From Macrostomum lignano (taxonomy: Eukaryota), in contig NIVC01002227.1 of NCBI GenBank assembly GCA_002269645.1, positions 1 through 64,000 of the forward strand: 64,000 nucleotides of DNA, given 5' to 3'. The notes below the pieces were generated by a model. That model ran no database searches and was not told the DNA's origin. It saw only the letters and a program-made list of their open reading frames with translations. Numbering within the stretch: position 1 is the first letter of the stretch; each line of letters opens with the position of its first letter. This document shows positions 1-56,900 of this stretch, one piece after another. Both the position numbers and the translations under genes were made by a program.

Positions 1-2645
1 CTTCTCCCCTCTCCTCTCCTCCTCTCTCCTCTCTCTTTCTTCTCCTCTCCCTCTCCTCTCCTCTCCTCTCCTCTTCCCCTCTCCTCTCCTCTCCTCCTCT
101 CTCCTCTCCTCCCTCTCCTCTCTCCTCTCTCTCTCCTCCTCCTCTCCTCTCCTCTCCTCTCCTCTCCTCTCCTCTCCTCTCCCTCTCCTCTCCTCTGTCC
201 TCTCCTCTCCTCTCCTCTCCTCTCCTCTCCTCTACCTCTCCTCTCCTCTCCTCTCCTCTCCTCTCCTCTCCTCTCCTCTCCTTCTCCTCCTCTCTCCCTC
301 CTTTCTTCTCCTCTCCTCTCCCTCCTCTCCCTCTCCTCTCCTCTCCTCTCCTCTCCTCGTCTCTCCTCCCTCTCCCTCTCCTCCTCTCCTCCTCTCCTCT
401 CTCTCCTCTCCTCTCCTCTCCTCCTCCTCTCCTCTCCTCTCGCTCTCCTTCCCTCCTCTCCTCTCCTCTCCTCTCTCTCTTCTCTCCTCTCCTCTCCTCT
501 CCTCTCCTCTCCTCTCCTCTCCTCTCCTCTCTCTCTCCTCTCCTCTCCTCTCCTCTCCTCTCCCTCCTCTCCTCTCCTTCCTCTCCTCTCCTCTCCTCTC
601 CTCTCTCTCTCCTCTCCTCTCCTCTCCTCTCCTCTTCCTCTCCTCTCCTCTCCTCTCCTCTCCTCTCCTCCTCTCCTCTCCTCTCCTCTCGCTCTCCTCT
701 CCTCTCCTCTCCTCTCCTCTCCTCTCCTCTCCTCTCACTCTCCCTCCTCTCCTCTCCTCTCCTCTCCTCTCCTCTCCTCTCCTCTCCTCTCCTCTCCTCT
801 CCTCTCCTCCTCCCTCCCCTCTCTCCCCTCTCTCCTCTCCTCTCACTCTCCTCTCCTCTCTCCTATCCTCTCCTCTCCTCTCCTCTCTCTCCTCTCCTCT
901 CCTCTCTCTCTCCTCTCTCTCCTCTCCTCTCCTCTCCTCTCCTCTCCTCCTCCTTCCTCTCCTCTCCTCTCCTCTCCTCTCCTCCTCTCCTCCTCTCTCC
1001 TCTCCTTTCTTCTCCTCTCCTCTCCTCTCCTCCTCTCTCCTCTCCTCCCTCCCTCCTCTCTCCCTCTCCTCTCCTCTCCTCTCCTCTCCTCTCTCTCCTC
1101 CTCTCCTCCTCTCCTCTCCTCTCCCTCTCTCTCCTCTCCTCCTCTCCTCTCCTCTCCTCCTCTCTCCTCTCCTCTCCTCTCCTCTCCTCTCCTCTCCTCT
1201 CCTCTCCTCTCCTCTCTCTCCTCTCCTTCTCTCCTCTCCTCTCCTCCTCCTCTCCTCTCCTCTCCTCTCCTCTCCTCTCCTCTCCTCTCCTCCTCTCCTC
1301 TCCTCCCTTCTCCTCCTCTCCTCTCCTCTCCTCTCCTCTCCTCTCCCTCTCCTCTCCTCTCCTCTCCTCTCCTCTCCTCTCCTCTCCTCTCCTCTCCTCT
1401 CCTCTCCTCTTCTCTCCTCTCCTCTCTCTCTCCTCTCCTCTCCTCTCCCCTCTCCTCTCCTCTCCTCTCCTCCTCCTCTCCTCTCCTCTCCTCTCCCTCC
1501 TCTCCTCTCCTCTCCTCTCCTCTCCTCTCGACTCCTCTCTCCTCTCCTCTCCTCTCCTCTCCTCTCCTCTCCTCTCCTCTCCTCTCCTCTCCTCTCCTCT
1601 CCTCTCCTCTCCTCTCCTCTCTCTCTCCTCTCCTCTCCTCTCCTCTACTCTCCTCTCCTCTCCTCTCCTCTCCTCTCCTCTCCTCTACTCTCCTCTCCTC
1701 TCCTCTCCTCTCCTCTCTCTCCTCTCCTCTCCTCTCCTCTCCTCTCCTCTCCTCTCCTCTCCTCTCCTCTCCTCTCCTCTCCTCTCCTCTCCTCTCCTCT
1801 CCTCTCCTCTCCTCTCCTCTCCTCTCCTCTCCTCTCCTCTCCTCTCCTCTCCTCTCCCTCTCTCCTCTCCTCTCCTCTCCTCTCCTCTCCACTCCTCTCC
1901 TCTCCTCCTCTCTCCTCTCCTTTCTTCTCCTCTCCTCTCCTCTCCTCTCCTCTCCTCTCCTCTCCTCTCCCTCCTCTCCTCTCTCTCCTCTCCTCTCCTC
2001 TCCTCTCCTCTCCTCTCCTCCTCTCTCCTCTCCTCCTCTCTTCTCCCCTCTCCTCTCCTCCTCTCTCCTCTCCTTTCTTCTCCTCTCCTCTCCTCTCCTC
2101 TCCTCTCCTCTCCTCTCCTCTCCTCTCCTCTCCTCCTCTCTCCTCTCCTCCCCTCTCCTCCTCTCTCCTCTCCTCTCCTCTCCTCTCCTCTCCTCTCCTC
2201 TCCTCTCCTCTCCTCTCCTCTCCTCTCCTCTTCTCTCCTCTCCTCTCCTCTCCTCTCCTCTCCTCTCTTCTCCCCTCTCCTCTCCTCCTCTCTCCTCTCC
2301 TTTCTTCTCCTCTCCTCTCCTCTCCTCTCCTCTCCTCTCCTCTCCTCTCCCCTCTCTCCTCTCCTCTCCTCTCTCTCCTCTCCTCCCCTCTCCTCCTCTC
2401 TCCTCTCCTCTCCTCTCCACTCCTCTCCTCTCCTCTCCTCTCCTCTCCTCTCCTCTCCTCTCCTCTCCTCTCCTCTCCTCTCCTCTCCTCTCTCCCTCCT
2501 CCTCTCTCTCCTCTCCTCTCCTCTCCTCTCCTCTCCTCCTCTCTCCTCTCCTCTCCTCTCCTCTCCTCTCCTCTCCTCTCCTCTCCTCTCCTCTCCTCTC
2601 CCCTCCTCTCCTCTCCTCTCCTCTCCTCTAATCCCCTCTCCTCCC
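1..2645. repeat. (CTCCT)n / CT-rich simple satellite
   Basis: Almost pure pyrimidine CTCCT/CT repeat from window start; source of the spurious RGEER ORFs. Confidence 0.97.
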
Positions 2646-5162: not shown

Positions 5163-10058
<4,896 letters not shown>

Positions 10059-10277: not shown

Positions 10278-10730
10278 TTTAGTAATAAAAATTTCTCACA
10301 GAATTTCTTGTGTAGACTACTTATGGTAAGTTACGTGCAAGTAGTCGTTAAAATTTGATATTTTAATTTCGAAAAAGAGAGAGATAACTTTTTTTAAGTG
10401 GCCATTTGAGCGGTGAAGTATCGCTATTTCAGGCGCCACGGGGACTTTAGCTGTCCTTGGCTTCAGCTGTCCCTGCATGGCTTTGATCGCAATACATGTA
10501 ATTGAACTCAGAAAATACCCGAAAGACTTATTTTTAATGCAGTTTGCTCAAACGAACTCCCAACGTTTGAGATGGATCTCGGCAAAACTTTTCCGGTTTT
10601 TTAAAAAGATTTATTAAATTTGATTGTTTCGAATTTCCTGTACGTTTTAAGCTTGCATGCACAAATAAACAGCTGAGTCGCATTTATGATTTTCTATATT
10701 TCAGCAACTGAGAAGGGAGACGCTGCGCAG

Positions 10731-11288
10731 TCAGTAGATGTCGCAGGAGCAATAGTTCCACAGCTGCTGTACGCTGCAAGAACTCACGCAGCAGTCGCAG
10801 CCAATGTCGCTTTTGGTCGGCCGGATTCGCCAAACCTGGCTCCGATCCATGCTCTGCAGCTTCTTCACTTCGGCATCGCTGATGAGCTTGTGATTCCCCC
10901 GCTGCTGCCGCTGCTGCTGCTGCCGCTGCTGCTGCTGCCGCTGCTGCTGCCCCCGCTTGACCAGCATGTGGTCAACTCGACACTCGGTGAAGTTGAAGTG
11001 CCGGAAGTCGCCAGAGTTCAACTGGGGCAGCAGATCCGGCCGGTGCTTCACAACTCGCATCGCGCGGCAGTACCAGCAGCAGGCGCCCTCCCACAGGTAG
11101 TACAGGCGGCGGCCGCAGACCCCCTGCCGCTGCTGGCTGGCCGGGATCGGCACCCCATTGCACACATCGGCGCCGCTTGAAGAGATGATAGCTCTCTGCG
11201 GCCCGGGCACAGACTCGCAGCCTACTGCTAGTAGTACGGTAATGAATAGGACTACGGATGAAGCAGTGATTAGTTGACAGCCAGTCAT
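10731..11288 (-). CDS. Insulin-like peptide precursor (185 aa, single coding exon, extra cysteines)
   Basis: Hydrophobic signal peptide; B-chain CGRRLYYLWEGAC (C-x11-C with CG-x2-L); KR site and Gln/Arg-rich C-peptide; A-chain CCVSSCSVQQLWNYC (CC-x3-C-x8-C insulin signature). Confidence 0.92.
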   Translation of the reverse strand: MTGCQLITASSVVLFITVLLAVGCESVPGPQRAIISSSGADVCNGVPIPASQQRQGVCGRRLYYLWEGACCWYCRAMRVVKHRPDLLPQLNSGDFRHFNFTECRVDHMLVKRGQQQRQQQQRQQQQRQQRGNHKLISDAEVKKLQSMDRSQVWRIRPTKSDIGCDCCVSSCSVQQLWNYCSCDIY

Positions 11289-11477
11289 GATGTCGATTGC
11301 TAGGAGGCTGGAAGAGAAATTATGTTGAAATTAGAATGAATGAATGAATGATTCAATGAATTATCAGGAAAAGTGGCAATTATTTAAATTTTAATTTTGG
11401 GAATAGCTCACCGGATTAGTGACGGATTAGAAAGCAGAGCTGCAGTGTCGCATCTCGTCCAGAACTGGCATCGGCGC

Positions 11478-11483
11478 TTTATA
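11478..11483 (-). promoter_or_regulatory. Candidate TATA box of the ILP gene
   Basis: TATAAA on - about 70 nt upstream of a donor (ccg|gtgagc at 11412/11411); acceptor-like ttccag/cctag lies just 5' of the ATG. Confidence 0.45.
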
Positions 11484-11579: not shown

Positions 11580-12150
11580 TTTGGGGCGCTGTTGGGGCAC
11601 TGTTGGGGCACTGTTGGGGCACTGTTGGGGGCACTGTTGGGGCACTGTTGGGGCACTCTTGGGGCACTCTTGGGGCACTCTTGGGGCACTCTTGGGGCAC
11701 TGTTGGGGCACTCTTGGGGCACTCTTGGGGCACTGTTGGGGCACTCTTGGGGCACTCTTGGGGCACTGTTGGGGCACTGTTGGGGCACTGTTGGGGCACT
11801 CTTGGGGCACTCTTGGGGCACTCTTGGGGCACTCTTGGGGCACTCTTGGGGCACTCTTGGGGCACTCTTGGGGCACTCTTGGGGCACTCTTGGGGCACTC
11901 TTGGGGCACTGTTGGGGCACTCTTGGGGCACTGTTGGGGCACTGTTGGGGCACTGTTGGGGCACTGTTGGGGCACTCTTGGGGCACTCTTGGGGCACTCT
12001 TGGGGCACTCTTGGGGCACTCTTGGGGCACTCTTGGGGCACTGTTGGGGCACTCTTGGGGCACTGTTGGGGCACTGTTGGGGCACTCTTGGGGCACTGTT
12101 GGGGCACTGTTGGGGCACTGTTGGGGCACAATGGGGGCACTGTTTGGGGC
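11580..12150. repeat. 12-bp minisatellite
   Basis: ggggcactgtt(g)/ggggcactctt(g) units. Confidence 0.96.
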
Positions 12151-13479: not shown

Positions 13480-14665
13480 CCAGTCTCATTGGTGTCTAAG
13501 TGACTCAATGGATGTTGAAGCAACTCAGTCTAATGGATTCCTAAGTGACTCAGTCTCACTGATGTTGAAGTGACTCAGTCTCACTGATGTTGAAGTGACT
13601 CAGTCTCACTGATGTTGAAGTGACTCAGACTCACTTGATGTTGAAGTGACTCAGTCTCACTGATGTTGAAGTGACTCAGACTCACTTGATGTTGAAGTGA
13701 CTCAGTCTCACTGATGTTGAAGTGACTCAGTCTCACTGATTTTGAAGTGACTCAGTCTCTCTGGATGTTGAAGTGACTCAGTCTCACTGATTTTGAAGTG
13801 ACTCAGTCTCACTGATGTTGAAGTGACTCAGTCTCACTGATTTTGAAGTGACTCAGTCTCTCTGGATGTTGAAGTGACTCAGTCTCACTGATTTTGAAGT
13901 GACTCAGTCTCACTGATGTTGAAGTGACTCAGTCTCACTGATGTTGAAGTGACTCAGTCTCACTGATGTTGAAGTGACTCAGTCTCACTGATGTTGAAGT
14001 GACTCAGACTCACTTGATGTTGAAGTGACTCAGTCTCACTGATGTTGAAGTGACTCAGACTCACTTGATGTTGAAGTGACTCAGTCTCACTGATGTTGAA
14101 GTGACTCAGACTCACTTGATGTTGAAGTGACTCAGTCTCACTGATGTTGAAGTGACTCAGTCTTACTGGATGTTGAAGTGACTCAGTCTCTCTGGATGTT
14201 GAAGTGACTCAGTCTCACTGATTTTGAAGTGACTCAGTCTCACTGATGTTGAAGTGACTCAGTCTCTCTGATGTTGAAGTGACTCAGTCTCTCTGATGTT
14301 GAAGTGACTCAGTCTCTCTGGATGTTGAAGTGACTCAGTCTCTCTGGATGTTGAAGTGACTCAGTCTCACTGATGTTGAAGTGACTCAGTCTCTCTGATG
14401 TTGAAGTGACTCAGTCTCTCTGGATGTTGAAGTGACTCAGTCTCTCTGATGTTGAAGTGACTCAGTCTCTCTGATGTTGAAGTGACTCAGTCTCTCTGGA
14501 TGTTGAAGTGACTCAGTCTCTCTGGATGTTGAAGTGACTCAGTCTCTCTGGATGTTGAAGTGACTCAGTCTCTCTGATGTTGAAGTGACTCAGTCTCTCT
14601 GGATGTTGAAGTGACTCAGTCTCATTGATGTTGAAGTGACTCAGTCTCAGTCATGCATAAGTGAC
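13480..14665. repeat. 25/26-bp minisatellite
   Basis: gatgttgaagtgactcagtctcact units, intergenic between ILP and RTCA. Confidence 0.97.
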
Positions 14666-15118
14666 TCTTTTACAATGACTGCAGACGATTATTAAAACCT
14701 ACCAGTAAAATAAATAAAATGTTACTAAGGCACTCAGAGCGTTTTGGCAAAACCAATGACCTGAGAAGAAAGTACTTGTCAATCTTAATGCTAAACATTT
14801 TTATTGCAAATCATAAAAACAAAATAGTTTAGAAAGACAGATTATTAAAAATATAAACTTGTATTAGTTCTTTATTTATAGAAGAAAATTTTCAACGACA
14901 CACAGAAACGCATAAGTCTACTTGTTCAGTAGTAAAATCAGCATTTTAAGCATTTTTCTTAACTAAATATGGATTTTTTTAAATTTATTATTTTCAGCTG
15001 TTCCTGGCTCTTTGCTGTATTTTTTCGCAACTGAATTTGTCTATGGCAAAAAACCCATTCCATAGCTATAAAAACGCAGATAAAACAGTTTTAAACACAA
15101 ATAACACGCAGATTTGAT

Positions 15119-21783: not shown

Positions 21784-24700
21784 CTGCGGGTTGAATGACG
21801 GGCGGATGAAACCAGGTGATGGGGGTGAATGAACCCAGGTGATGGGGGTGAATGAACCCAGGTGATGGGGGTGAATGAACTCATGTGATGGGGTGAATGA
21901 ACCCATATGATGGGGGTGAATGAACCCATGTGATGGGGGTGAATGAACCGATGTGATGGGGATGAATGAACCCATGTGATGGGGGTGAATGAACCCAGGT
22001 GATGGTGCTGGATGGGCCAGGTGATGGTGCTGGATGAGCCCAGGTGATGGTGGTGGATGAGCCCAGGTGATGGTGCTGGATGAGCCCAGGTGATGGTGCT
22101 GGATGAGCCCAGGTGATGGTGGTGGATGAGCCCAGGTGATGGTGGTGGATGAGCCCAGGTGATGGTGGTGGATGAGCCCAGGTGATGGTGGTGGATGAGC
22201 GCAGGTGATGGGGGCGCGTGAATTCAGCTGGAGGGGCGGATGAATCCAGCTATGGGGGCGGATGAATGCAGCTGAGGGGGCGGGTGAATCCAGCTATGGG
22301 GGCGGATGAATCCAGCTATGGGGGGCGGATGAATGCAGCTGAGGGGGCGGATGAATCCAGCTATGGGGGCGGATGAATGCAGCTGAGGGGGGTTGAATCC
22401 AGCTATGGGGGGCGGATGAATGCAGCTGAGGGGGCGGGTGAATCCAGCTATGGGGGGCGGATGAATGCAGCTGAGGGGGCGGATGAATCTAGCTATGGGG
22501 GGCGGATGAATGCAGCTGAGGGGGGCGGGTGAATCCGGCTATGGGGGCGGATGAATGCAGCTGAGGGGGGCGGGTGAATCCGGCTATGGGGGCGGATGAA
22601 TCTAGCAAAGGGGGCGGGTAAATGCAGGTGCGGGCGCGTACGAACCCAGGACGCAACTGATAGGCAACTTACCGGCGCAATCAAAGAACTCATCGATAGA
22701 CTCGCACGGCAGCAAGTCGTCCTCGAAGACGCGCAGAACCCGATTGCAGCAGTCGATGACCTGGGCATCGTTGTGCCTCAGATAGTCAGTGAGACATTTT
22801 GCCCAGCTCTCCGAGCCCGACTGTTTGGCGTTGACAAACAGAATCCTATAGTAGCTGTCAATCAAGCCGAAGAACATCAGCGCCGGTTTGTAAACAGTTC
22901 GATAGTCCTCCGGCGAGCCGGTTCGAGGTTCGGTTGAAGCCAAGGCGGCCGAGCCAACAGGCGTGGTGGCAGCGGCGTGAGCGTGGTACAGCAGTCGGCG
23001 AAGATGACGCAACCGGTTGGCTGCCCACTGCCGAGGTCCGTGCAAGAAGAAGCTCATAGCGCATCGATAGTAGGGCCCGTCCAGGGTCCAGCTGGCCTCG
23101 AGCCAGGACTTGGCCGGCGCTTCAAGGTACTGACGTTGCAACGGTTCTTCTTTGGCTTCGCCGTCCTTGGCGCTGAACAGGTGCAGGCCCAGGTGCAACA
23201 GGTACGGCAATAGTTGGGCATTGCTCTGCCGGCCGCCGCCAAGGGTCTCGTCTGAGAATGAGCGCTCGCGAGCGAAGCGGAGTAGCAACAGTTTGAGGTC
23301 GTGCGCGTACAAGTGATAGTTGATGTCGCGCAGCTGGGTGGCCTCCTGGGGTGGGAGCGAGATGGTGTGATGAGCGAGATTATGACTGATGATGAAGAGA
23401 CTGTGACTGATGATGATGCAGAGTGAGACTGTGACTGATGATGATGCAGAGTGAGACTGTGACTGATGATGATGCAGAGTGAGACTGTGACTGATGATGA
23501 TGCAGAGTGAGACTGTGACTGATGATGATGCAGAGTGAGACTGTGACTGATGATGACGCAGAGTGAAACTGTGACTGATGATGATGCAGAGTGAGACTGT
23601 GACTGATGATGAACACTGAGACTGTGACTGATGATGAAGAGTGAGACTGAGACCGATTTTTTTTATTAGAGGCAGGGGGGTTGTGTGCACCCTGGCGCAC
23701 TTTAAGCGACATAGGCACACAACCGGCGAGAGGCATTACTGCCCATTCCGCCGACTCCCCTGAGCAGCACACAAGCGCGCGGATACGCTAACTTTGAGAT
23801 TTGACTTTAACTTTGTGAGATACCACTCACACTGGAGTGTACAGCGGCCCTAACTTTATTTTTAAGCGGCCCTAACTTTATTTTTAAGCGGCCCTAACTT
23901 TATTTTTAAGCGGCCCTGACTGTGACTGATGATGATGAGTGAGACTGTGACCGATGATGATGAATCAGACTGTGAGTGATGATAGTTAAATTCTCAGATG
24001 CAATAGAAAAGTCACAAGGTCGCCTCTTCCGCAACTCAAGAAAAGCTGGCGCACCTGGAGACAAGAGTGGTGCCGGCTGAGACAGCTGGCAAAGCCCAGA
24101 GCCTGCACAGCCGGCCCGTACAGCGGCAGCAGGCCGTTGCAGCGAACGTTGCCATTGTGCAAGAACGCGCTGTCCCATTCGCCGCGCTCCCGACTGTGTT
24201 TGACGGCGCTGACGTGGCACTCGATGTGAATAACAGTGAAAGCTGTCACGGTGCTAATGCCCTGGGTCTTGCGGGGCCTGGCTTCCAGCTCTTCCAGCTC
24301 TGTGCGCCTGCGGGTGATTGAGTAGTGGGTTGGGAGATTTAAGTTGAAATCCCTGCCTGTCTGTGCGTGTCTGTCTGTGTGTGTGTGTGTGTGTGTCTCT
24401 GTGTGTGTCTGTCTTAGTGTCTGTCTGTCTGAGTGTGTCTGTCTTAGTGTCTGTCTGTGTGTGTGTCTGACATAGTGTCTGTCTGTGTGTGTGTCTGTCT
24501 TAGTGTCTGTCTGTCTGAGTGTGTCTGTCTTAGTGTCTGTCTGTGTGTGTGTCTGTCTTAGTGTCTGTCTGTGTGTGTGTCTGTCTGAGTGTGTCTGTCT
24601 TAGTGTCTGTCTTAGTGTCTGTCCGCCTGAGTGTGTCTGTCTTAGTGTCTGTCTGTCTGTCTGTGTGTGTCTGTCTTAGTGTCTGTCTGTCTGGTATGTC

Positions 24701-33300: not shown

Positions 33301-36300
33301 CGGTAAAAAAGATTTACCGGTTTTGTGTAGCATGTCTCACCTTCTTATAGACCATAGCCACTGGCAGGTCCAAGCTGATAATCTTATTATCAACTAGCAG
33401 TTCCATAGCGGTGTCATCGTCAGCTAGGGACACCATATCCGTGTCCTTGCAGATCTTGGCTTTTACGTTGCGCATCAGCGGGCCAAGCTGAGGATCGCGC
33501 GAGCTGAACGAGCTGCCTTGAATGCGGCCGTGCAGGAACTCCTCTTGGCTGGGATCTTTCTCCAAGACCATGAAGAACTCAGGCACCTGTAGCGCGTGTC
33601 ACAGGGCTTTATATAAGTCCTGTTGCTATGAGAGACACCCCATGGCCCATATTGAGTAACAGGTTTCACGCCGACTGCGACACAAGTTCTGACACTAATT
33701 GACCCTACAATCCCAAGTCCTAACACTTATTGACCCTACAATCCCAAGTCCTGACACTTATTGACCCTACAATCCCAAGTCCTGACACTAATTGACCCTA
33801 CAATCCCAAGTCCTGACACTTATTGACCCTACAATCCCTAGTCCTGACACTTATTGACCCTACAATCCCAAGTCCTGACACTTATTGACCCTACAATCCC
33901 AAGTCCTGACACTTATTGACCCTAATCTCCTTAGTTCTGACACTCAATAATATGACTGATACGTTAAGACGTAAATTGAGACGACGTAGTGTCATGAGAC
34001 GTAGTGACATGACATATCTAAGCTATAGTCCTGACGCTAATTCTGATAATTATATTGACTCTAATCCACTAACACTTATTGATATCCAGCCACTTATGTT
34101 GACACAAATCCTGACACTTATATTGACACAAATCCTGACACTTATATTGACGCTAAGCCTGACTGACACATATCGATAATCCTGACACTATATTGACACC
34201 AATCCTGACACTTATTGTCGCTAAGCCTGACTGACACATATTGATAATCCTGACACTTATATTGACGCTAATCCTGACACTTATTGCCGCTAAGCCTGAC
34301 TGACACATATTGATAATCCTGACACTTACATTTACACAAATCCTGACACTATATTGACACAAATCCTGACACTTACATTGACACCAATCCTGACACTATA
34401 TTGACACAAATCCTGACACTATATTGACACAAATCCTGACACTTACATTGACACCAATCCTGACACTATATTGACACCAATCCTGACACTTACATTGACA
34501 CCAATCCTGACACTTACATTGACACCAATCCTGACACTATATTGACACCAATCCTGACACTTGTATTGACACCAATCCTGACACTATATTGACACCAATC
34601 CTGACACTATATTAACACCAATCCTGACACTATATTGACACCAATCCTGACACTATATTAACACCAATCCTGACACTTACATTTACACCAATCCTGACAC
34701 TTACATTGATACCAATCCTGACACTATATTGACACCAATCCTGACACTTGTATTGACACCAATCCTGACACTTACATTGACACCAATCCTGACACTATAT
34801 TGACACTAATCCTGACACTTACATTGACACCAATCCTGACACTATATTGACACCAATCCTGACACTTACATTGACACCAATCCTGACACTTACATTGACA
34901 CTAATCCTGACACTTACATTGACACCAATCCTGACACTATATTGACACCAATCCTGACACTTGTATTGACACCAATCCTGACACTTACATTGACACCAAT
35001 CCTGACACTATATTGACACTAATCCTGACACTTACATTGACACCAATCCTGACACTATATTGACACCAATCCTGACACTATATTGACACCAATCCTGACA
35101 CTATATTGACACCAATCCTGACACTATATTGACACCAATCCTGACACTTGTATTGACACCAATCCTGACACTATATTGACACCAATCCTGACACTATATT
35201 GACACCAATCCTGACACTTACATTTACACAAATCCTGACACTTACATTGACACCAATCCTGACACTATATTGACACCAATCCTGACACTTGTATTGACAC
35301 CAATCCTGACACTATATTGACACCAATCCTGACACTATATTGACACCAATCCTGACACTTACATTGACACCAATCCTGACACTATATTGACACCAATACT
35401 GACACTTACATTGACACCAATCCTGACACTTACATTTACACAAATCCTGACACTTACATTGACACCAATCCTGACACTATATTGACACCAATCCTGACAC
35501 TATATTGACACCAATCCTGACACTATATTGACACCAATCCTGACACTTACATTTACACAAATCCTGACACTTACATTGACACCAATCCTGACACTATATT
35601 GACACCAATCCTGACACTTACATTGACACCAATCCTGACACTTACATTGACACCAATCCTGACACTTGTATTGACACCAATCCTGACACTATATTGACAC
35701 CAATCCTGACACTATATTAACACCAATCCTGACACTTACATTTACACAAATCCTGACACTTACATTGACACCAATCCTGACACTTACATTGACACCAATC
35801 CTGACACTTGTATTGACACCAATCCTGACACTATATTGACACCAATCCTGACACTATATTGACACCAATCCTGACACTTACATTTACACAAATCCTGACA
35901 CTTACATTGACACCAATCCTGACACTATATTGACACCAATCCTGACACTTACATTGACACCAATCCTGACACTTACATTGACACCAATCCTGACACTTGT
36001 ATTGACACCAATCCTGACACTATATTGACACCAATCCTGACACTATATTAACACCAATCCTGACACTTACATTTACACAAATCCTGACACTTACATTGAC
36101 ACCAATCCTGACACTTACATTGACACCAATCCTGACACTTGTATTGACACCAATCCTGACACTATATTGACACCAATCCTGACACTTACATTGACACCAA
36201 TCCTGACACTATATTGACACCAATCCTGACACTTCTATATACAACGAAACCGAATCCAATGAAAGCTCACCTCCTGCTTGTGCGGCGTAACCAGACTGCA

Positions 36301-47900: not shown

Positions 47901-50900
47901 GGGAGGCTGGCCCAGCAACTGAGGATCTGGTAGGCTGGCCCAGCAACTGAGGATCTGGGAGGTTGGCCCAGCAACTGAGGATCTGGGAGGCTGGCCCAAA
48001 GCAACTGAGGATCTGGGAGGCTGGCCCAGCAACTGAGGATCTGGGAGGCTGGTCCACAGCAACTGAGGATCTGGGAGGCTGGCCCAGCAACTGAGGATCT
48101 GGGAGGCTGGTCCACAGCAACTGAGGATCTGGGAGGCTGGCCCAGCAACTGAGGATATGGGAGGCTGGCCCAGCAACTGAGGATCTGGGAGGCTGGTGGC
48201 CCAGCAACTGAGGATCTGGGAGGCTGGCCCAGCAACTGAGGATCTGGGAGGCTGGCCCAGCAACTGAGGATCTGGGAGGCTGGCCCAGCAACTGAGGATC
48301 TGGGAGGCTGGCCCAGCAACTGAGGATCTGGGAGGCTGGCCCAGCAACTGAGGATCTGGGAGGCTGGCCCAGCAACTGAGGATCTGGGAGGCTGGTCCAG
48401 CAACTGAGGATCTGGGAGGCTGGTCCAGCAACTGAGGATCTGGGAGGCTGGCCCAAAGCAACTGAGATCTGGGAGGCTGGCCCAGCAACTGAGGATCTGG
48501 TAGGCTGGCCCAGCAACTGAGGATCTGGGAGGTTGGCCCAGCAACTGAGGATCTGGGAGGCTGGCCCAAAGCAACTGAGGATCTGGGAGGCTGGCCCAGC
48601 AACTGAGGATCTGGGAGGCTGGTCCACAGCAACTGAGGATCTGGGAGGCTGGTCCACAGCAACTGAGGATCTGGGAGGCTGGCCCAGCAACTGAGGATTT
48701 GGGAGGCTGGCCCACAGCAACTGAGGATCTGGGAGGCTGGCCCAAAGCAACTGAGGATTTGGGAGGCTGGCCCAGCAACTGAGGATCTGGGAGGCTGGTG
48801 GCCCAGCAACTGAGGATCTGAGAGGGTGACAGTCAAACCAGTCGGTTGCCAGTTCCATTCGCAAACACTGCAAACTTAAAGCAAACCTGATCGTCCATCT
48901 GTCCGCCATCGAATCCCTGAGCAACCTGCAGCAGAGCGGCGCCCAGATGCATGGGATCCTCGTCTTCATCTTCCTCTTCCTCCTCCTCCATCTCTTCGAC
49001 GTCGCGCTCCTCCGCGGCGACCATCATAGCAGCCTGGTCGTCTTCGTCCATGGCTTCGTGATCGAATTCGGCCCCGGCTGCCACGGCGGCAGCGACAGCG
49101 TCATCGGCCAGCTCTTGGGCGGCAGCCGGCGCCGGGGGCGGCGGTGTCGGCGGAGCGGCCGCAGCCTCTTCAGCTGGCAGCTGCTGATCATGCGCCTGCT
49201 GCTGCTGCTGCTGCCTACGTTGACGCCGGTGAAGTCCCAAACGACGCGATCGACTGCCGGACGCCCCGGCAGTTGCACCGGCTGCCGACAAAGCCGACGA
49301 AGGCTCCTGTCCAGCCGACAGCGAAGCGGCGACACCGGCACCCTGACCAGACGGCTGTTGACGAAGCTCCTCCTGACTCTGCTGACGGTGTCGGTGCTGC
49401 TGCTCGCTCGGCTTCCTCAGCAGCTGGCCAAGCGCCTGTCGACAGGCGTGAGCCGCCTCGCCGCAGCGGTGCAACAGTAGCTCAGAGTAGATTGTCATCA
49501 CCTGGTCGACTAGGCGGGCATCGGCTCGGCAGCAGGCGTGCAAGGTCTGCACCAGCGGAGCTACCAGACCTTCAACAGGCGGCGGCGGGCCGAGGCCTAA
49601 CCGGTGCAGCCCGACAGAGTCGGCTGGTCGTTCAACTAGCGCGCGCTTGGCGCAGTCCCATAGCAACTGGACTAGATTTGAGCTGGCTAATAAATTAGAT
49701 CCCGGCTGCGACATCAACAGGAGACTGTCTGGTCTGGATTGGCCAATATCGTACAGCAGGCTGACTAAGTGCACCACCAGCAGCTGGTCCACTGGCTGAC
49801 TGCTGCTGGACATCTGTTGCAGTTGGTCAACGCAATGCCGAAGTATCGTAGCGTCCTTGGCCTGCGATAAGTTTAAAGCCGGGATTTTTTAAATAAAAGC
49901 GACTACTAATAGTAATAATCCCACCAATACTGTTCGCAGGCACGCAGTTGTACACACGCTCACACAGGGTGTACATCGGCCATGAAAAGATCATATATAC
50001 ACAAGATGGGCCACTCATTAATCGCTTGTGGCCATAGAAGCTAATGTAAAAAAATTGCATCTCGCGACAGCGCGAAAATGGGGGCCCATCACAAGCTCGA
50101 AAAATCACATCGTCGATAAGCATCCACCATCACAAGCTCGAAAAATCACATCGTCGAAAAAAAGCAGAAAGCTCGAGTAGGGTTAGGGTTAGAGCTTGTG
50201 CCTTAGGGTTAGGGTTTAGTTTAGGGTCGGGGTTAGAGCTTGTGCCTTAGGGTTAGGGTTTAGGTTAGGGTCGGGGTTAGAGCTTGTGCCTTAGGGTTAG
50301 GGTGTAGGGTAAAGTTAGTTTTTTGGGGTTAGAGCTTGTGCTTTAGGGTTAGGGTTTAGGGTTAAGTTAGGGTTGGGGTTAGAGCTTGTCCCTTAGGGTT
50401 AGGGTTTAGGTTAGGGTCGGGGTTAGAGCTTGTGCCTTAGGGTTAGGGTCGGGGTTAGAGCTTGTGCCTTAGGGTTAGGGTTTAGGTTAGGGTTGGGGTT
50501 AGAGCTTTTGCCTTAGGGTTAGGGTTTTGGTTAGGGTCGGGGTTAGAGCTTGTGCCTTAGGGTTAGGGTTTAGGTTAGGGTCGGGGTTAGAGCTTGTGCC
50601 TTAGGGTTAGGGTCGGGGTTAGAGCTTGTGCCTTAGGGTTAGGGTTTAGGTTAGGGTTGGGGTTAGAGCTTGTGCCTTAGGGTTAGGGTTTAGGGTTAAG
50701 TTAGGGTTGGGGTTAGAGCTTGTGCCTTACCTTACCAATACTACTGATAGTAATGCACAAATCAGATTAAAAAATAATCGCACCTTATGAAAATCTTTGG
50801 CTCCGGAGTGCACAGAGCGCAGATAGCGCAAAGCTTCAACGCAGATTCGTTTAGGCGCCGAACTGAGCAGCAGACTCTCGCATAGCGGCACGGCAGCTTC

Positions 50901-53900: not shown

Positions 53901-56900
53901 TGCTAATTTCTGGCTAAAAATAGCGCCGTTAGAAGACATAATCAATAGTCTTGGCCCATCCCCGGCAGTTGAGCCAACAAACGTGGCATCCCGGATGCTG
54001 CCGGAGCCAATTAGAAAATAATACTGCGGACTGATAACGTCAAGGGCCGTATTGAAAATCTTCACGCAACTAGGCGTAACAATGGCCAATTCGGATGGAG
54101 AACCGGGCAGCCATATTGACTTGATAATGTGTGTATTGGACTCTAGCGCCGTGGTGACTACCAGTACATCCTGAATAGAGCCGCTTCCAGTCAGCGTAAT
54201 TAGGCGGCATTCGCGCAGGCCGCACACGGATACGATTGAATCGTTGGCCGGATTTGGCGCGATGTGCACCACCTGTGATCGAGTTGGGTTGTCATTCGAA
54301 ACTTTGCAATTGAAGTAGCGATTTCATTAGCGATTTCAGTAGCGATGATGGAACTCATAATGATGGTTCAGTAGATGATGGTTCAGTAGATGATGGGTCA
54401 GTAGGTCAGCAGATGGTGGAACTCATGATTATGACTCAGTAGATGATGGCACTTATGATGATGGTTCAGCAGATGAAAATGATGGGCCAGCAGCTGACAA
54501 TGATGGGTCAGCAGCTGACAATGATGATCCGGCAGCTGACAATGATGGGTCAGCAGATAAAAATGATGGCTTAGCAGCTGACAATGATAGGTCAGCAGAT
54601 GCAAATTAAGCAAACTGTTCAATAGGTATTGTCACCTGAAAGTGCAGCGTTGCGCAGTCAATAGGATTAGACAACAATTTCCGTTTCATAGCAGTCGCAG
54701 AAGTGGCCTTCTTGCCGTTGCCGCCATTGTTAGCAGACTTCTTATTGTTGCTATGCAGGTCATCATCTTCTGAATTGTGCATAGCAACAGCTTGATTAAC
54801 CAGCGCCTTCAGCGATACGGTGCTAATCCTGCCCTGATCGCTGGCAAGAATCAGATTGTCGCATTGTCTACCGCACAACGGAACCAAAGGCACCCTAGCT
54901 AGATTGTGATTGGCTAGCAGGGCTTTCAATTGTTGACCCTCTTCGCCGGAATAGGATAGCTTTAGTCTGTCGAATGCGCCATCGTCGCATTGGATGCTGG
55001 TGGTCTGGAGTTCGATTCACGTATTGAAAGACAAAATAAATATCATAATTGTTAACGCTACTTGAACTTCAATATTTTGGGTATTAGAACACACTTTAAG
55101 ATCCTCGTGAAATAAATGAAATGCCAGCATTTGTTGGTTGTGATCTACTGTAATGCATTGGCTCGTACTGTACTTGATCACACTCAGCTGTGCTTTTTGT
55201 GTCTACACTGTTATGCTTTATCTTCCCCCGCGCGCTGATTGGCTGCTCTCTCCTTCTACCTTCTACCTCTATCCCCCAATTTTTGTAACTCCTTGCTAGT
55301 CGTGCCCTCTCATTGGCTGTCAACCTAGTTTTCTACCCCACTCTATATGTAGTGTTCTACCCTCACCCCCCTACAGCCATTTTTTTTATTAGAGGCAGGG
55401 GGGTTGTGTGCACCCTGGCGCACTTTAAGCGACATAGGCACACAACCGGCGAGAGGCATTACTGCCCATTCCGCCGACTCCCCTGAGCAGGCATACAAGC
55501 GCGCGGATACGTACGCAGGCACACACTCACACAGGAGTGTACAGCGGCCCTAACTTTATATTATCGTTAGGCATGTACACTTCACTGCGCTTTGGGGGGT
55601 TGGCTCTCAAGGCCGTTAATTGCACGAGCAGAGCCAAGCCGAGATTCCAATTCAGCCCCAAATTAATGTGACTGCACTTGGAATCGAGCCTGGGTCGCTG
55701 GCACACCAGAGCAGCTGCGCTACCGCTGGCTACGCCCCCCCCCTGCAGCCAATTCTCTCTCTCTCCTTCGAAGCCCACCTCAAATCTGTTATTCTTTAAC
55801 GCGCGCGCGCCAATCACAAGCCGCCCCAATAAAAACGGTACCTCAACCAACGAGCGGACCAGAGTCACTTAAGTCGCCTCAGAGTTATTCAAGAGTTGTT
55901 ACAGGTAAAACATGCAAAACAGGAAAGAAGTGACTCTAGACGATTCTCAAATGACGATGTGTCACAGTGGAAATCGCTAAAGTCGTTTAAGCGTCAATTT
56001 GAGGAGTTTTATTGTCTACGACTCTGGGTGCGTCTATAACAACTCTGAGACCGTAGAGTTGCTGTAGAATAAAGCGAATCTGCATCAATTTAGAAATTAG
56101 AGTCGTATTTCTCATTTATGACAACTCTATTTAGTCGATTGGAATTAGTAGAAAGTGAAGCGCTAACAAAACTCTTAGACGACTGACTCTTTTAACGATT
56201 CTGAAACGGTATTAAACGGTATTCCCAAAGGATCCTAGGTGTGATAAAACACACTGACAATGACTAACCAGCAGCTGGTCGCATTGCACAGTGACAATCT
56301 TCTCTCCGTTATAGAATCTATCGTAGGCCGACCCAATCCAGGCACTGTTGCCAACAGCCCTACGCTTGTAGATCTCTAGCAGAGGCTGGGCCAGGCGGCT
56401 CAACAGCCGATTAATCAGGGCCACGTATTCCGGCTGCATCAGCAGCTCGCACAGGCTGTCACGGTGCGACTCTATCTGGCGGCGGAATTCGCTTGATCGA
56501 GTAGCAGACGACACTGTCGATGCAAGATGGTGCGCCTGCGGCAGAGACGGCGGCGGTGGCGGCGGCGGAGGTGAAGCCTCGGCCTGCTTGGACTGCTGCT
56601 GCTGATGATGCCGTCGTCGTCTTGAAGCGGCAGCCGCAGCAGCGGCGGCGGCAGCAGAGGCGGCAGCGGATGCGCCGGACTTTCTGGCCGGTCGTGACGG
56701 CGGCGGCGCGGCGGCAGCTGCGGCGGCTGCAGCAGCGACAGCGGCGCTAGCGGAGCGCCGATTCAACGCCTGACAGAATGACTCGCCTTTGGCGCCGCAG
56801 TCGCAGAAGAAAGCGCCAAATTTGTTATAAGTAAGATCGTGGCCACGGTGGCAGAGCCGGGCGCACACGGAACAGACGCCAACTCCGTCAACAAATTTGC

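What the first reader, a model, noticed from the sequence alone, without database searches (positions are those of the whole stretch)
10731..11288. Insulin-like peptide with 12 cysteines (up to six disulfides)
Beyond the six canonical insulin Cys there are six extras: one N-terminal of the B-chain (DVCNG), two just after the B19 equivalent (ACCWYC), one in the connecting region (TECR), one at the A4 equivalent (IGCDCC, like the IVCECC pattern of molluscan insulin-related peptides) and one C-terminal (YCSC). The even count suggests three additional bridges, more than the four-disulfide molluscan type. The A-chain lacks the usual KR-GIV start (RIRPTK|SDIG).
Basis: partly seen in the sequence, partly recalled or inferred. 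Interest (0 to 1): 0.72.

Follow-up and report, generated by a model that had tools for sequence, protein, structure and literature searches.

The report
Flatworm insulin-like peptide, twelve cysteines
This is a real, apparently undescribed insulin-family hormone gene of the flatworm Macrostomum lignano that has the full eight-cysteine framework of mollusc insulins plus four more cysteines; whether these make fifth and sixth disulfide bridges could not be tested here.

Summary
Window 10731-11288 (- strand) is an intact 185-codon ORF.

The window is Macrostomum lignano. The only public relative, UniProt A0A1I8IPM6, maps at 100% identity in three pieces. That model shifts frame in a G-run, so it lacks the A chain, and it is misnamed.

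Eight Cys reproduce the complete molluscan (MIP-type) insulin framework with identical spacing: C-x14-C-x11-C ... C-x-CC-x3-C-x8-C. The A-chain region hits only insulin/IGF chains in the PDB (best E=0.004). Pfam Insulin stays below its cutoff.

The gene looks functional:
- TATA box
- 104-nt GT-AG intron in the 5'UTR
- uninterrupted coding sequence
- AATAAA signal

The four extra Cys sit at B20, B23 and A22, plus C103 in a long extension after the B chain. No ortholog or paralog turned up among 1.84 billion cluster representatives or in the 5.8-billion word index, and no paper describes it.

The six-disulfide reading is plausible but unproven. AlphaFold failed, processing sites are ambiguous, and no expression data were available. 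Locust aIGF, with ten Cys, is a precedent for insulin-like peptides with extra bridges.

Verdict: a new variant of a known kind, of moderate interest.

The parts
11478..11483 (-). TATAAA box upstream of the 5'UTR exon
   Evidence: Read directly from the sequence. Function inferred.
11412..11476 (-). Exon 1 (5'UTR). The 5' limit is taken from the public gene model, and the true transcription start is unknown. It contains short upstream ATGs that end at a TAA.
   Evidence: P0001 residues 1-22 map here at 100% identity.
11308..11411 (-). 104-nt GT-AG intron in the 5'UTR (GTGAGC...TCTCTTCCAG)
   Evidence: The junction LIR|LLAIDIM of P0001 is reproduced only by splicing these sites.
10731..11288 (-). 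Complete coding sequence of the insulin-like peptide precursor (185 codons plus stop), with no intron in the coding part
   Evidence: It is the first in-frame ATG of the spliced mRNA, with A at -3. It has the best codon-usage score of the six frames, but only weakly.
11211..11288 (-). Signal peptide (residues 1 to about 24-26), including C4 and C24
   Evidence: Hydrophobicity profile and -3/-1 rule. No dedicated signal-peptide predictor was available.
11067..11162 (-). B-chain core, residues 43-74: C43 (extra MIP-type Cys), C58=B7 followed by Gly, L62=B11, C70=B19, then extra C71=B20 and C74=B23
   Evidence: Spacings of 15 and 12 are identical to cuttlefish SjILP Cys48/63/75..
10953..11066 (-). 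Extension after the B chain, residues 75-112: RAMR78, NFT glycosylation sequon (99-101), lone C103, ending in K111-R112
   Evidence: Identical in P0001.
10899..10952 (-). Q/R-rich connecting segment encoded by an imperfect CAG/CGG repeat (residues 113-130, ending in RQQR)
10950..10954 (-). Run of five G (C on the + strand) that sets the reading frame. The public model A0A1I8IPM6 behaves as if it had four, so it leaves the frame and loses the A chain.
   Evidence: The two tblastn pieces of P0001 abut here in different frames.
10815..10898 (-). Rest of the connecting region, residues 131-158, with K142-K143 and R155-P-T-K158
10734..10814 (-). A-chain domain, residues 159-185: I162=A2, C164=A4 (MIP-type), C166/C167=A6/A7, C171=A11, L176=A16, Y179=A19, C180=A20, extra C182=A22, then DIY-stop
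   Evidence: All 51 PDB hits for this region are insulin/IGF, best E=0.0038. Motif C-x-CC-x3-C-x8-C.
10610..10615 (-). AATAAA polyadenylation signal, about 116 nt after the stop codon
   Evidence: Function inferred.

Best explanation
The feature is the gene for a secreted insulin-superfamily prohormone of the free-living flatworm Macrostomum lignano. Shown by sequence: a TATA-preceded two-exon gene with a 5'UTR intron and an uninterrupted coding sequence. It encodes, in order, a signal peptide, a B-chain domain, a long connecting region and a C-terminal A-chain domain. Inferred mechanism: after signal-peptide removal the proprotein folds in the ER around the three canonical insulin disulfides (C58-C167, C70-C180, C166-C171). 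It also forms the fourth bridge typical of molluscan and nematode beta-type insulins (C43-C164). The four remaining Cys (C71=B20, C74=B23, C182=A22, C103) probably form two further bridges. The geometrically most natural pairing is C74-C182, because the A-chain C-terminus packs on the B20-B23 turn in insulin, together with C71-C103, which would tie the extension after the B chain back onto the core. Prohormone convertases then cut at K111-R112, and probably at RQQR130 or RPTK158, removing the Q/R-rich spacer. The result would be a two-chain hormone with an unusually long, possibly N-glycosylated B chain. It would have three chains if RAMR78 is also cut. By analogy with planarian ilp-1/inr-1 and other invertebrate ILPs, it should signal through an insulin-receptor tyrosine kinase to couple nutrition to growth, stem-cell proliferation and the gonads. 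The confidence given applies to the core claim, a genuine MIP-type insulin-superfamily gene. I put the six-bridge detail at about 0.35.
For: ORF and Cys positions. Source organism and independent confirmation of residues 1-113: (P0001 = M. lignano A0A1I8IPM6, 100% identical in three pieces). Gene structure (TATA, GT-AG intron 11308-11411, AATAAA). Insulin A chain: all 51 PDB hits of the A region are insulin/IGF, best E=0.0038. With the fused B+A query, 57 of the 60 listed PDB hits are insulin-superfamily chains, among them IGF-I, IGF-II and C. elegans beta-type ILP at E 0.01-0.09. Pfam Insulin is the top family, though sub-threshold. The 8-Cys framework and its spacing are identical to the MIP signature C(1X)CC(3X)C(8X)C with B-chain Cys 15 and 12 residues apart, for which the bridges C48-C132, C63-C135, C75-C148 and C134-C139 are given for cuttlefish ILP (PMC9221753). 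Chance expectation is 3.6e-7. Core residues are kept, as read from the sequence: Gly after B7, Leu B11, Ile A2, Leu A16, Tyr A19. Precedent for extra bridges: locust aIGF with 10 Cys (PMC8220825).
Against: Pfam PF00049 scores only 14.3 bits against a gathering cutoff of 23, and lower still for the mini-constructs. The B-chain region alone finds no insulin in the PDB. No homolog besides the species' own truncated model was found in 1.84 billion representatives or the 5.8-billion word index, so conservation of the extra Cys cannot be judged. Both AlphaFold2 runs were uninformative. No expression data were available. The only public model of the locus is frame-shifted and lacks the A chain, which could reflect a real null allele or paralog rather than an assembly error. 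There is no dibasic site directly before the A chain. The signal peptide's n-region has no positive charge. All disulfide pairings beyond the eight-Cys framework are inference.
Confidence: 0.78

Rival explanations
1. It is an insulin-derived secreted protein that is no longer a classical metabolic or growth hormone. It could be a gland, mucus, seminal-fluid or defensive product, and the extra disulfides and glycan would serve extracellular stability. It might be left largely unprocessed, like an IGF.
For: There are extra Cys, a long extension after the B chain carrying an N-glycosylation sequon, and no canonical KR before the A chain. The sequence is highly divergent, with no detectable orthologs. 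Insulin-like proteins were detected among the predicted toxins in the proteomic results of two planarians, and insulins are recruited into nemertean and cone-snail venoms (bioRxiv 10.1101/2025.01.09.632098). The aromatic B24-B26 triplet is replaced by R-A-M.
Against: Receptor-contact and core positions A2 Ile, A16 Leu, A19 Tyr and B11 Leu are retained. Many genuine invertebrate ILP hormones also lack B24 Phe and are equally divergent. There is no tissue information either way.
Confidence: 0.15
2. It is an ordinary four-disulfide MIP-type insulin. The segment holding C103 is removed with the connecting peptide, and the remaining extra Cys (C71, C74, C182) form one extra bridge plus one free or intermolecular thiol (a dimer). 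Six intramolecular bridges would then never exist.
For: RAMR78 (an RxxR site) and KR112 flank the C103 segment. In typical insulins everything between B30 and A1 is discarded.
Against: This would leave an odd number (11) of Cys in the mature hormone. Disulfides form before convertase cleavage, so a C103 bridge would keep the fragment attached. RAMR|V is only a minimal furin-type site.
Confidence: 0.2
3. It is a pseudogene or silent locus, or the intact frame is an artefact of this assembly, and the true sequence carries the 1-nt shorter G-run seen in the public model.
For: The only public protein for this locus (A0A1I8IPM6) changes frame at 10950-10954 and terminates without an A chain. The full-length protein is absent from a collection of about 15 billion sequences. 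The codon-usage signal is weak.
Against: In the window's frame the ORF runs straight into a canonical insulin A chain and stops five residues after A20. That is extremely unlikely if the frame were wrong. Homopolymer indels are typical long-read assembly errors. TATA box, splice sites and poly(A) signal are intact.
Confidence: 0.06
4. It is an unrelated 12-Cys secreted protein, for example of the IGFBP-N-domain or neuroparsin type (these also have 12 Cys and a GCGCC motif), and its insulin-like motifs arose by chance.
For: 12 Cys and a G-C-D-C-C string superficially recall the GCGCCxxC motif of the IGFBP N-domain. Pfam Insulin is sub-threshold.
Against: There was no IGFBP or other Cys-rich family hit even at E<=10. 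The spacing is CC-x3-C, not CC-x2-C, and the motif is C-terminal rather than N-terminal. The full MIP framework has a chance expectation of 3.6e-7, and PDB hits are almost exclusively insulin family.
Confidence: 0.02

Closest known systems
Molluscan insulin-related peptides (MIP type; e.g. Lymnaea MIPs, cuttlefish Sepiella japonica ILP, PMC9221753)
   Same: Signal peptide, B chain, connecting peptide, A chain. The 8-Cys framework is identical: B-chain Cys 15 and 12 residues apart, and A-chain C-x-CC-x3-C-x8-C. It is also from a spiralian.
   Different: There are four additional Cys (B20, B23, A22 and one 29 residues after B23). A 38-residue extension with an N-glycosylation sequon precedes the first KR. 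A Q/R-repeat spacer is present. No KR precedes the A chain. Sequence similarity is undetectable by HMMER.
C. elegans beta-type insulin-like peptides (INS-6, PDB 2KJI/8TK9)
   Same: Four-disulfide insulin fold with an extra B-N-terminus to A-chain bridge. They are weak but specific phmmer hits (E 0.07-0.09).
   Different: They are short single-domain peptides without a long connecting region, and they have no Cys at B20, B23 or A22.
[quoted passage not shown]
   Same: An insulin-superfamily member with four Cys beyond the canonical six, for which extra bridges are predicted (5 in all).
   Different: It has ten Cys, not twelve, and is an arthropod IGF-type single chain. No sequence relationship is detectable and the positions of the extra Cys were not compared.
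Parasitic flatworm ILPs (Schistosoma SjILP/SmILP, Fasciola FgILP; PMC5391603, PMC11162077)
   Same: Same phylum. Insulin-like precursors of 130-150 aa with B and A chains.
   Different: Their reported A-chain motifs are CCCX2CX8C or CCX4CX7C, against canonical CCX3CX8C here. Schistosome genes have two exons split by an 8-12 kb intron, whereas here the coding sequence is uninterrupted. No detectable sequence similarity.
Planarian ilp-1 / inr-1 system (Miller and Newmark 2012; from my own knowledge, paper not held)
   Same: A free-living flatworm insulin-like peptide. It is the likely functional analogue, acting on body size, neoblasts and the germline.
   Different: No orthology is shown.
Vertebrate insulin / IGF-I / IGF-II
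   Same: The A chain is 50-60% identical over A2-A21 (IGxxCCxSxCSxxQLxNYC). Canonical B7, B19, A6, A7, A11 and A20 Cys and the B8 Gly are present.
   Different: There is no B24-B26 aromatic triplet, there are six extra Cys, and the connecting region is about 85 residues long.

Membership tests
Insulin/IGF/relaxin superfamily (Pfam PF00049, PROSITE PS00262) | A-chain signature C-C-x3-C-x8-C with a hydrophobic residue at A16 (PROSITE pattern recalled from memory) | tested here: met
   C166-C167-VSS-C171-SVQQLWNY-C180. It is the only such motif in a non-repeat ORF of the window.
Insulin/IGF/relaxin superfamily (Pfam PF00049, PROSITE PS00262) | B-chain C-G-x10-C (B7 to B19, 11 residues between) with Leu at B11 | tested here: met
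   C58-GRRLYYLWEGA-C70.
Insulin/IGF/relaxin superfamily (Pfam PF00049, PROSITE PS00262) | Score above the Pfam gathering threshold | tested here: not met
   14.3 bits, E=0.086, against a cutoff of 23. The mini-constructs scored 11.3 and 8.5 bits. Only the A-chain half aligns.
Insulin/IGF/relaxin superfamily (Pfam PF00049, PROSITE PS00262) | Significant similarity to members with solved structures | tested here: inconclusive
   E-values are marginal (0.004-0.1) but specificity is near-complete: 51 of 51 hits and 57 of the 60 listed hits are insulin family. The B chain alone gives none.
Insulin/IGF/relaxin superfamily (Pfam PF00049, PROSITE PS00262) | N-terminal signal peptide (secreted precursor) | tested here: met
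   Hydrophobic core at residues 6-22, followed by small residues at -3/-1. No SignalP was available.
Insulin/IGF/relaxin superfamily (Pfam PF00049, PROSITE PS00262) | Three-helix insulin fold | tested here: inconclusive
   AlphaFold2 single-sequence models had pLDDT 35.7 and 44.1. No fold search was run on them.
Insulin/IGF/relaxin superfamily (Pfam PF00049, PROSITE PS00262) | Binds and activates an insulin-receptor tyrosine kinase (or an RXFP-type GPCR) | not testable with these tools
   Needs binding and signalling assays.
MIP-type / beta-type four-disulfide insulins | Extra Cys N-terminal of B7 and extra Cys two residues before the A-chain CC (C-x-CC) | tested here: met
   C43 lies 15 residues before C58, and C164-D-C166-C167 is present. 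Spacing is identical to cuttlefish ILP Cys48/63/75 and C(1X)CC(3X)C(8X)C.
MIP-type / beta-type four-disulfide insulins | Exactly eight Cys in the mature hormone; KR sites flanking the C-peptide | tested here: not met
   There are 12 Cys after the signal peptide. KR occurs only at 111-112, and the A chain is preceded by RIRPTK.
Relaxin-like peptides | B-chain R-x3-R-x2-I/V receptor-binding cassette | tested here: not met
   The B chain reads C-G-R-R-L-Y-Y-L-W-E-G-A-C. Only the first Arg is in register.
IGF-type single-chain factors | Short uncleaved C domain and D/E extensions after A20 | tested here: not met
   The connecting region is about 85 residues and holds KR, RQQR and KK sites. Only 5 residues follow A20. 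Actual processing is untested.
IGFBP N-domain / neuroparsin (12-Cys secreted proteins) | N-terminal 12-Cys module with GCGCCxxC | tested here: not met
   No Pfam IGFBP hit at E<=10. The motif here is GCDCCxxxC and sits at the C-terminus.

The most novel reading that the evidence does not exclude
Macrostomum makes a six-disulfide insulin, a structural class not yet described. The insulin core would be clamped by two additional bridges: A22 to the B20-B23 turn, and the turn to a glycosylated extension after the B chain. After convertase cleavage this could be a three-chain hormone. If the pattern is conserved across Macrostomorpha, it would show how far the insulin scaffold can be elaborated in an early-branching flatworm lineage, and it would give a naturally hyper-stabilised insulin fold.
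Probability: 0.3. Interest if true: 0.6.

Novelty: new variant of a known kind. Interest (0 to 1): 0.42.

Why it matters
Macrostomum lignano is a transgenic, RNAi-amenable flatworm model for stem cells, regeneration, ageing and reproduction. In my searches of the paper library, no insulin-like ligand has been described for it. The one public model of this locus is truncated and misnamed, so homology-based annotation would miss the gene.

Knowing the ligand makes the insulin axis of this model directly testable by RNAi, in situ hybridisation and receptor assays.

Structurally, a 12-Cys insulin would extend the known range of the superfamily: 6 Cys in vertebrates, 8 in molluscs and nematodes, 10 in locust aIGF. 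It could also inform the design of disulfide-stabilised insulin scaffolds.

If the extra Cys are lineage noise, or the locus is silent, it is simply one more divergent invertebrate ILP.

Tried and rejected
- Pfam scan of the full precursor and of two B+A mini-constructs: Insulin was the top hit but sub-threshold, and the B chain was never aligned.
- phmmer of the B-chain region alone against the PDB: no insulin hit, only a spurious membrane protein.
- Word-index homology search with the full protein and again with the B+A domains only: only the species' own truncated model came back.
- Exhaustive phmmer against 1.84 billion cluster representatives: only P0001 and a spurious repeat protein, P0002.
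- Exact-sequence look-ups: the full-length protein is not in the collection, and no contig is on record for P0001.
- JGI metagenome scan: nothing.
- AlphaFold2 on the pro-protein and on a 74-residue B+A construct: pLDDT 35.7 and 44.1. These were rejected as evidence and no fold search was run.
- Codon-usage likelihood trained on the neighbouring UBR4 exons: the ILP frame is the best of the six, but the margin is too small to count.
- Antisense ORF 10686-11180 (+): low-complexity Leu/Pro translation of the CAG repeat with no family hit, rejected as a gene.
- Relaxin, IGF and IGFBP/neuroparsin readings were rejected on motif grounds (see the membership test).
- Literature searches for a Macrostomum ILP or any six-disulfide ILP found none. 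The key paper on parasitic flatworm ILPs (FEBS J 2014) and the Mendeley table of ILP Cys patterns are not held.

Full report
**1. What is in the sequence**

Window 10731-11288 on the - strand is an uninterrupted ATG-to-TGA ORF of 185 codons. Its product begins with a hydrophobic stretch (residues 6-22, Kyte-Doolittle peak 3.3) followed by G-C-E-S, which is a typical secretory signal.

After that signal there are 12 Cys: C43, C58, C70, C71, C74, C103, C164, C166, C167, C171, C180 and C182. Two more Cys (C4, C24) lie in the signal peptide. By the -3/-1 rule, cleavage after C24 or S26 is likeliest and leaves 12 Cys.

**2. Where it comes from**

A search of 5.8 billion clustered proteins returned one hit, UniRef A0A1I8IPM6 of the flatworm Macrostomum lignano (P0001; 168 aa; E=1e-72). 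tblastn of P0001 on the window gives three pieces, each 100% identical:
- aa 1-22 map to 11476..11411.
- aa 23-141 map to 11306..10950.
- aa 141-168 map to 10951..10868, in a different frame.

The window is thus M. lignano.

The first junction defines a canonical 104-nt GT-AG intron (11308-11411; GTGAGC...TCTCTTCCAG) inside the 5'UTR.

The second junction is a 1-nt discrepancy in a run of five G at 10950-10954. With four G, the public model slides into a Ser/Gly frame of the CAG repeat and stops at 10868 without an A chain. This explains why the protein is uninformatively named ('Yippee domain-containing') and carries no Pfam domain. In the window's frame the ORF runs on into a textbook insulin A chain and stops five residues after A20, which argues strongly that the window's frame is the biological one.

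A TATAAA box (11478-11483), an A at -3 of the ATG, and AATAAA 116 nt after the stop (10610-10615) complete a plausible small gene. The exact full-length protein is absent from a collection of about 15 billion sequences.

**3. Is it an insulin?**

Profile evidence is weak. Pfam Insulin is the best family but reaches only 14.3 bits against a cutoff of 23, and it aligns only the A-chain half. Removing the long connecting region did not help.

Other evidence is specific:
- With the A-chain region as query, all 51 PDB sequences at E<=10 are insulin or IGF (best E=0.0038; IGCDCCVSSCSVQQLWNYCS against [20 protein letters not shown]).
- With a fused B+A query, 57 of the 60 listed PDB hits are insulin-superfamily chains, including IGF-I, IGF-II and the C. 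elegans beta-type ILP.
- The B chain alone is too short and divergent for phmmer. It still has C58-G-x10-C70, the exact B7-B19 spacing, with Gly at B8 and Leu at B11.
- The A chain keeps Ile A2, Leu A16 and Tyr A19.

Most tellingly, eight of the Cys reproduce the complete molluscan insulin-related-peptide framework. Cuttlefish ILP has B-chain Cys48/63/75 (spacings 15 and 12) and the A-chain signature C(1X)CC(3X)C(8X)C. Its bridges are given as C48-C132, C63-C135, C75-C148 and C134-C139 (PMC9221753). The window protein has C43/58/70 (spacings 15 and 12) and C164-x-C166C167-x3-C171-x8-C180.

For 12 Cys scattered at random over 161 residues, the expected number of such frameworks is 3.6e-7. The looser test, CCx3Cx8C plus an upstream Cx11C, succeeds in 722 of 2,000,000 shuffles. 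I therefore treat membership of the insulin superfamily, MIP/beta-type, as well supported, even though the Pfam threshold is not met.

**4. What is unusual**

- There are four additional Cys: C71 and C74 at the B20 and B23 positions of the turn after the B-helix, C182 at A22, and C103.
- C103 sits in a 38-residue extension (75-112) that follows the B-chain core. The extension contains an NFT glycosylation sequon next to C103 and ends in the only KR of the precursor (K111-R112).
- Next comes a Q/R-rich spacer encoded by an imperfect CAG/CGG repeat (113-130, ending RQQR).
- Then comes a 28-residue stretch with KK (142-143).
- The A chain is preceded by RIRPTK rather than KR.
- The coding region has no intron, whereas schistosome ILP genes are split by an 8-12 kb intron (PMC5391603).
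- Parasitic flatworm ILPs are reported with different A-chain patterns, CCCX2CX8C and CCX4CX7C. This gene is therefore not simply the known flatworm type.

**5. How it probably works (inference)**

- After signal-peptide removal, the proprotein folds oxidatively to form the four framework bridges: C58-C167, C70-C180, C166-C171 and C43-C164.
- The even number of leftover Cys suggests two more bridges. In insulin the A-chain C-terminus packs against the B20-B23 turn, so C74-C182 with C71-C103 is the most natural pairing. The alternatives C71-C182 with C74-C103, or C71-C74 with C103-C182, cannot be excluded.
- Convertase cleavage at KR112, plus RQQR130 and/or RPTK158, would release the spacer and leave a two-chain hormone with a long B chain. 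Cleavage at RAMR78 as well would leave a three-chain molecule held together through C103.
- By analogy with planarian ilp-1/inr-1 (Miller and Newmark 2012; my own knowledge, cited in the papers found), it would act on an insulin-receptor kinase to couple feeding to growth, neoblast proliferation and the gonads.

None of these steps could be tested. Both AlphaFold2 single-sequence runs were unusable (pLDDT 35.7 and 44.1), and no alignment could be built because no relatives exist in the searchable collections.

**6. Rivals**

- (a) A neofunctionalised secreted insulin-like protein (gland, mucus, seminal or defensive) in which the extra bridges give stability. Insulin-like proteins were detected among the predicted toxins in the proteomic results of two planarians. 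Confidence about 0.15.
- (b) An ordinary four- or five-bridge ILP in which the C103 segment is discarded. This would leave an odd Cys count. Confidence about 0.2.
- (c) A pseudogene or silent locus, or a frame artefact of this assembly. Confidence about 0.06. The perfect in-frame A chain and the intact gene signals argue against it.
- (d) An unrelated 12-Cys protein of the IGFBP/neuroparsin type. Confidence about 0.02. There is no Pfam hit and the spacing and position are wrong.

**7. Novelty**

- No ortholog or paralog was found in 1.84 billion cluster representatives read exhaustively by HMMER. The only other hit, P0002, is a spurious repeat protein.
- The word-indexed 5.8-billion set queried with the B+A domains gave one candidate, P0001 itself.
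- JGI metagenomes gave nothing.
- Full-text searches found no paper describing a Macrostomum ILP or an insulin-like peptide with six disulfides. The 'six disulfide' hits refer to IGFBPs.
- ILPs with more than four predicted bridges do exist: locust aIGF has ten Cys and five predicted bridges (PMC8220825). This gene is therefore a further step along a known axis, not a new kind of molecule.

I rate it a new variant of a known kind, of moderate interest. The main practical value is a correctly framed insulin ligand for a genetically tractable flatworm model.

**8. Limits**

- No expression data, no orthologs and no usable structure model were available.
- The A-chain Cys codons are not independently confirmed.
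- Signal-peptide and convertase sites are rule-of-thumb predictions.
- The PROSITE pattern, the insulin 3D contacts and the planarian function are from my own knowledge.

Noticed in passing
window 22602-63729 (- strand): Exons of a giant UBR4-type E3 ubiquitin ligase gene. Pfam E3_UBR4_N hits at 61648-63729 and 59301-60731, zf-UBR at 56212-57177, and E3_UbLigase_R4 C-terminus at 22602-23720 (E=1e-58). The insulin-like gene lies about 11 kb downstream on the same strand.
   Followed up: partly
window 11581-12150: An 11-nt minisatellite (TTGGGGCACTC, about 52 copies, 95% matches) starts only about 100 bp upstream of the TATA box of the insulin-like gene. It generates long spurious ORFs in all six frames.
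   Followed up: no
window 4-2643, 6211-8351, 8736-9609, 13511-14667, 34084-36238, 57186-58730 and many others: Tandem-repeat load is exceptional. Examples: (CTCTC)n about 530 copies, (TTAG)n about 535 copies, and many 18-76 nt minisatellites. Most long ORFs in the window are translations of these repeats.
   Followed up: no
window 50178-50729: Interstitial array with a 44-nt unit that contains TTAGGG telomere-like motifs (TAGGGTCGGGGTTAGAGCTTGTGCCTTAGGGTTAGGGTTTAGGT).
   Followed up: no
window 9417-10058 (+ strand): The non-repeat tail of this ORF reads ...IIPSGAFVICWTPYAVL...SYFAVNAEFRAAF, which resembles TM6 (CWxP) and TM7/helix 8 of a rhodopsin-type GPCR. It would be a terminal exon convergent with the insulin-like gene. 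Pfam gave no hit even at E<=1, so this is only a lead.
   Followed up: partly
window 10868-11476 / UniProt A0A1I8IPM6: The public M. lignano protein model for this locus is named 'Yippee domain-containing protein'. It is actually translated 5'UTR plus the signal peptide and B-chain half of this insulin-like precursor, followed by an out-of-frame Ser/Gly tail caused by a 1-nt difference in the G-run at 10950-10954.
   Followed up: yes
window 11427-11471 (- strand): The 5'UTR exon holds two upstream ATGs in one frame (MPVLDEMRHCSSAF-stop). They form a short upstream ORF that ends before the intron. Whether they lie in the transcript depends on the unknown transcription start.
   Followed up: no
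window 10686-11180 (+ strand): A 164-aa antisense ORF overlaps the insulin-like coding sequence. It is a Leu/Pro-rich translation of the complementary CTG repeat, has no Pfam family, and is judged spurious.
   Followed up: yes
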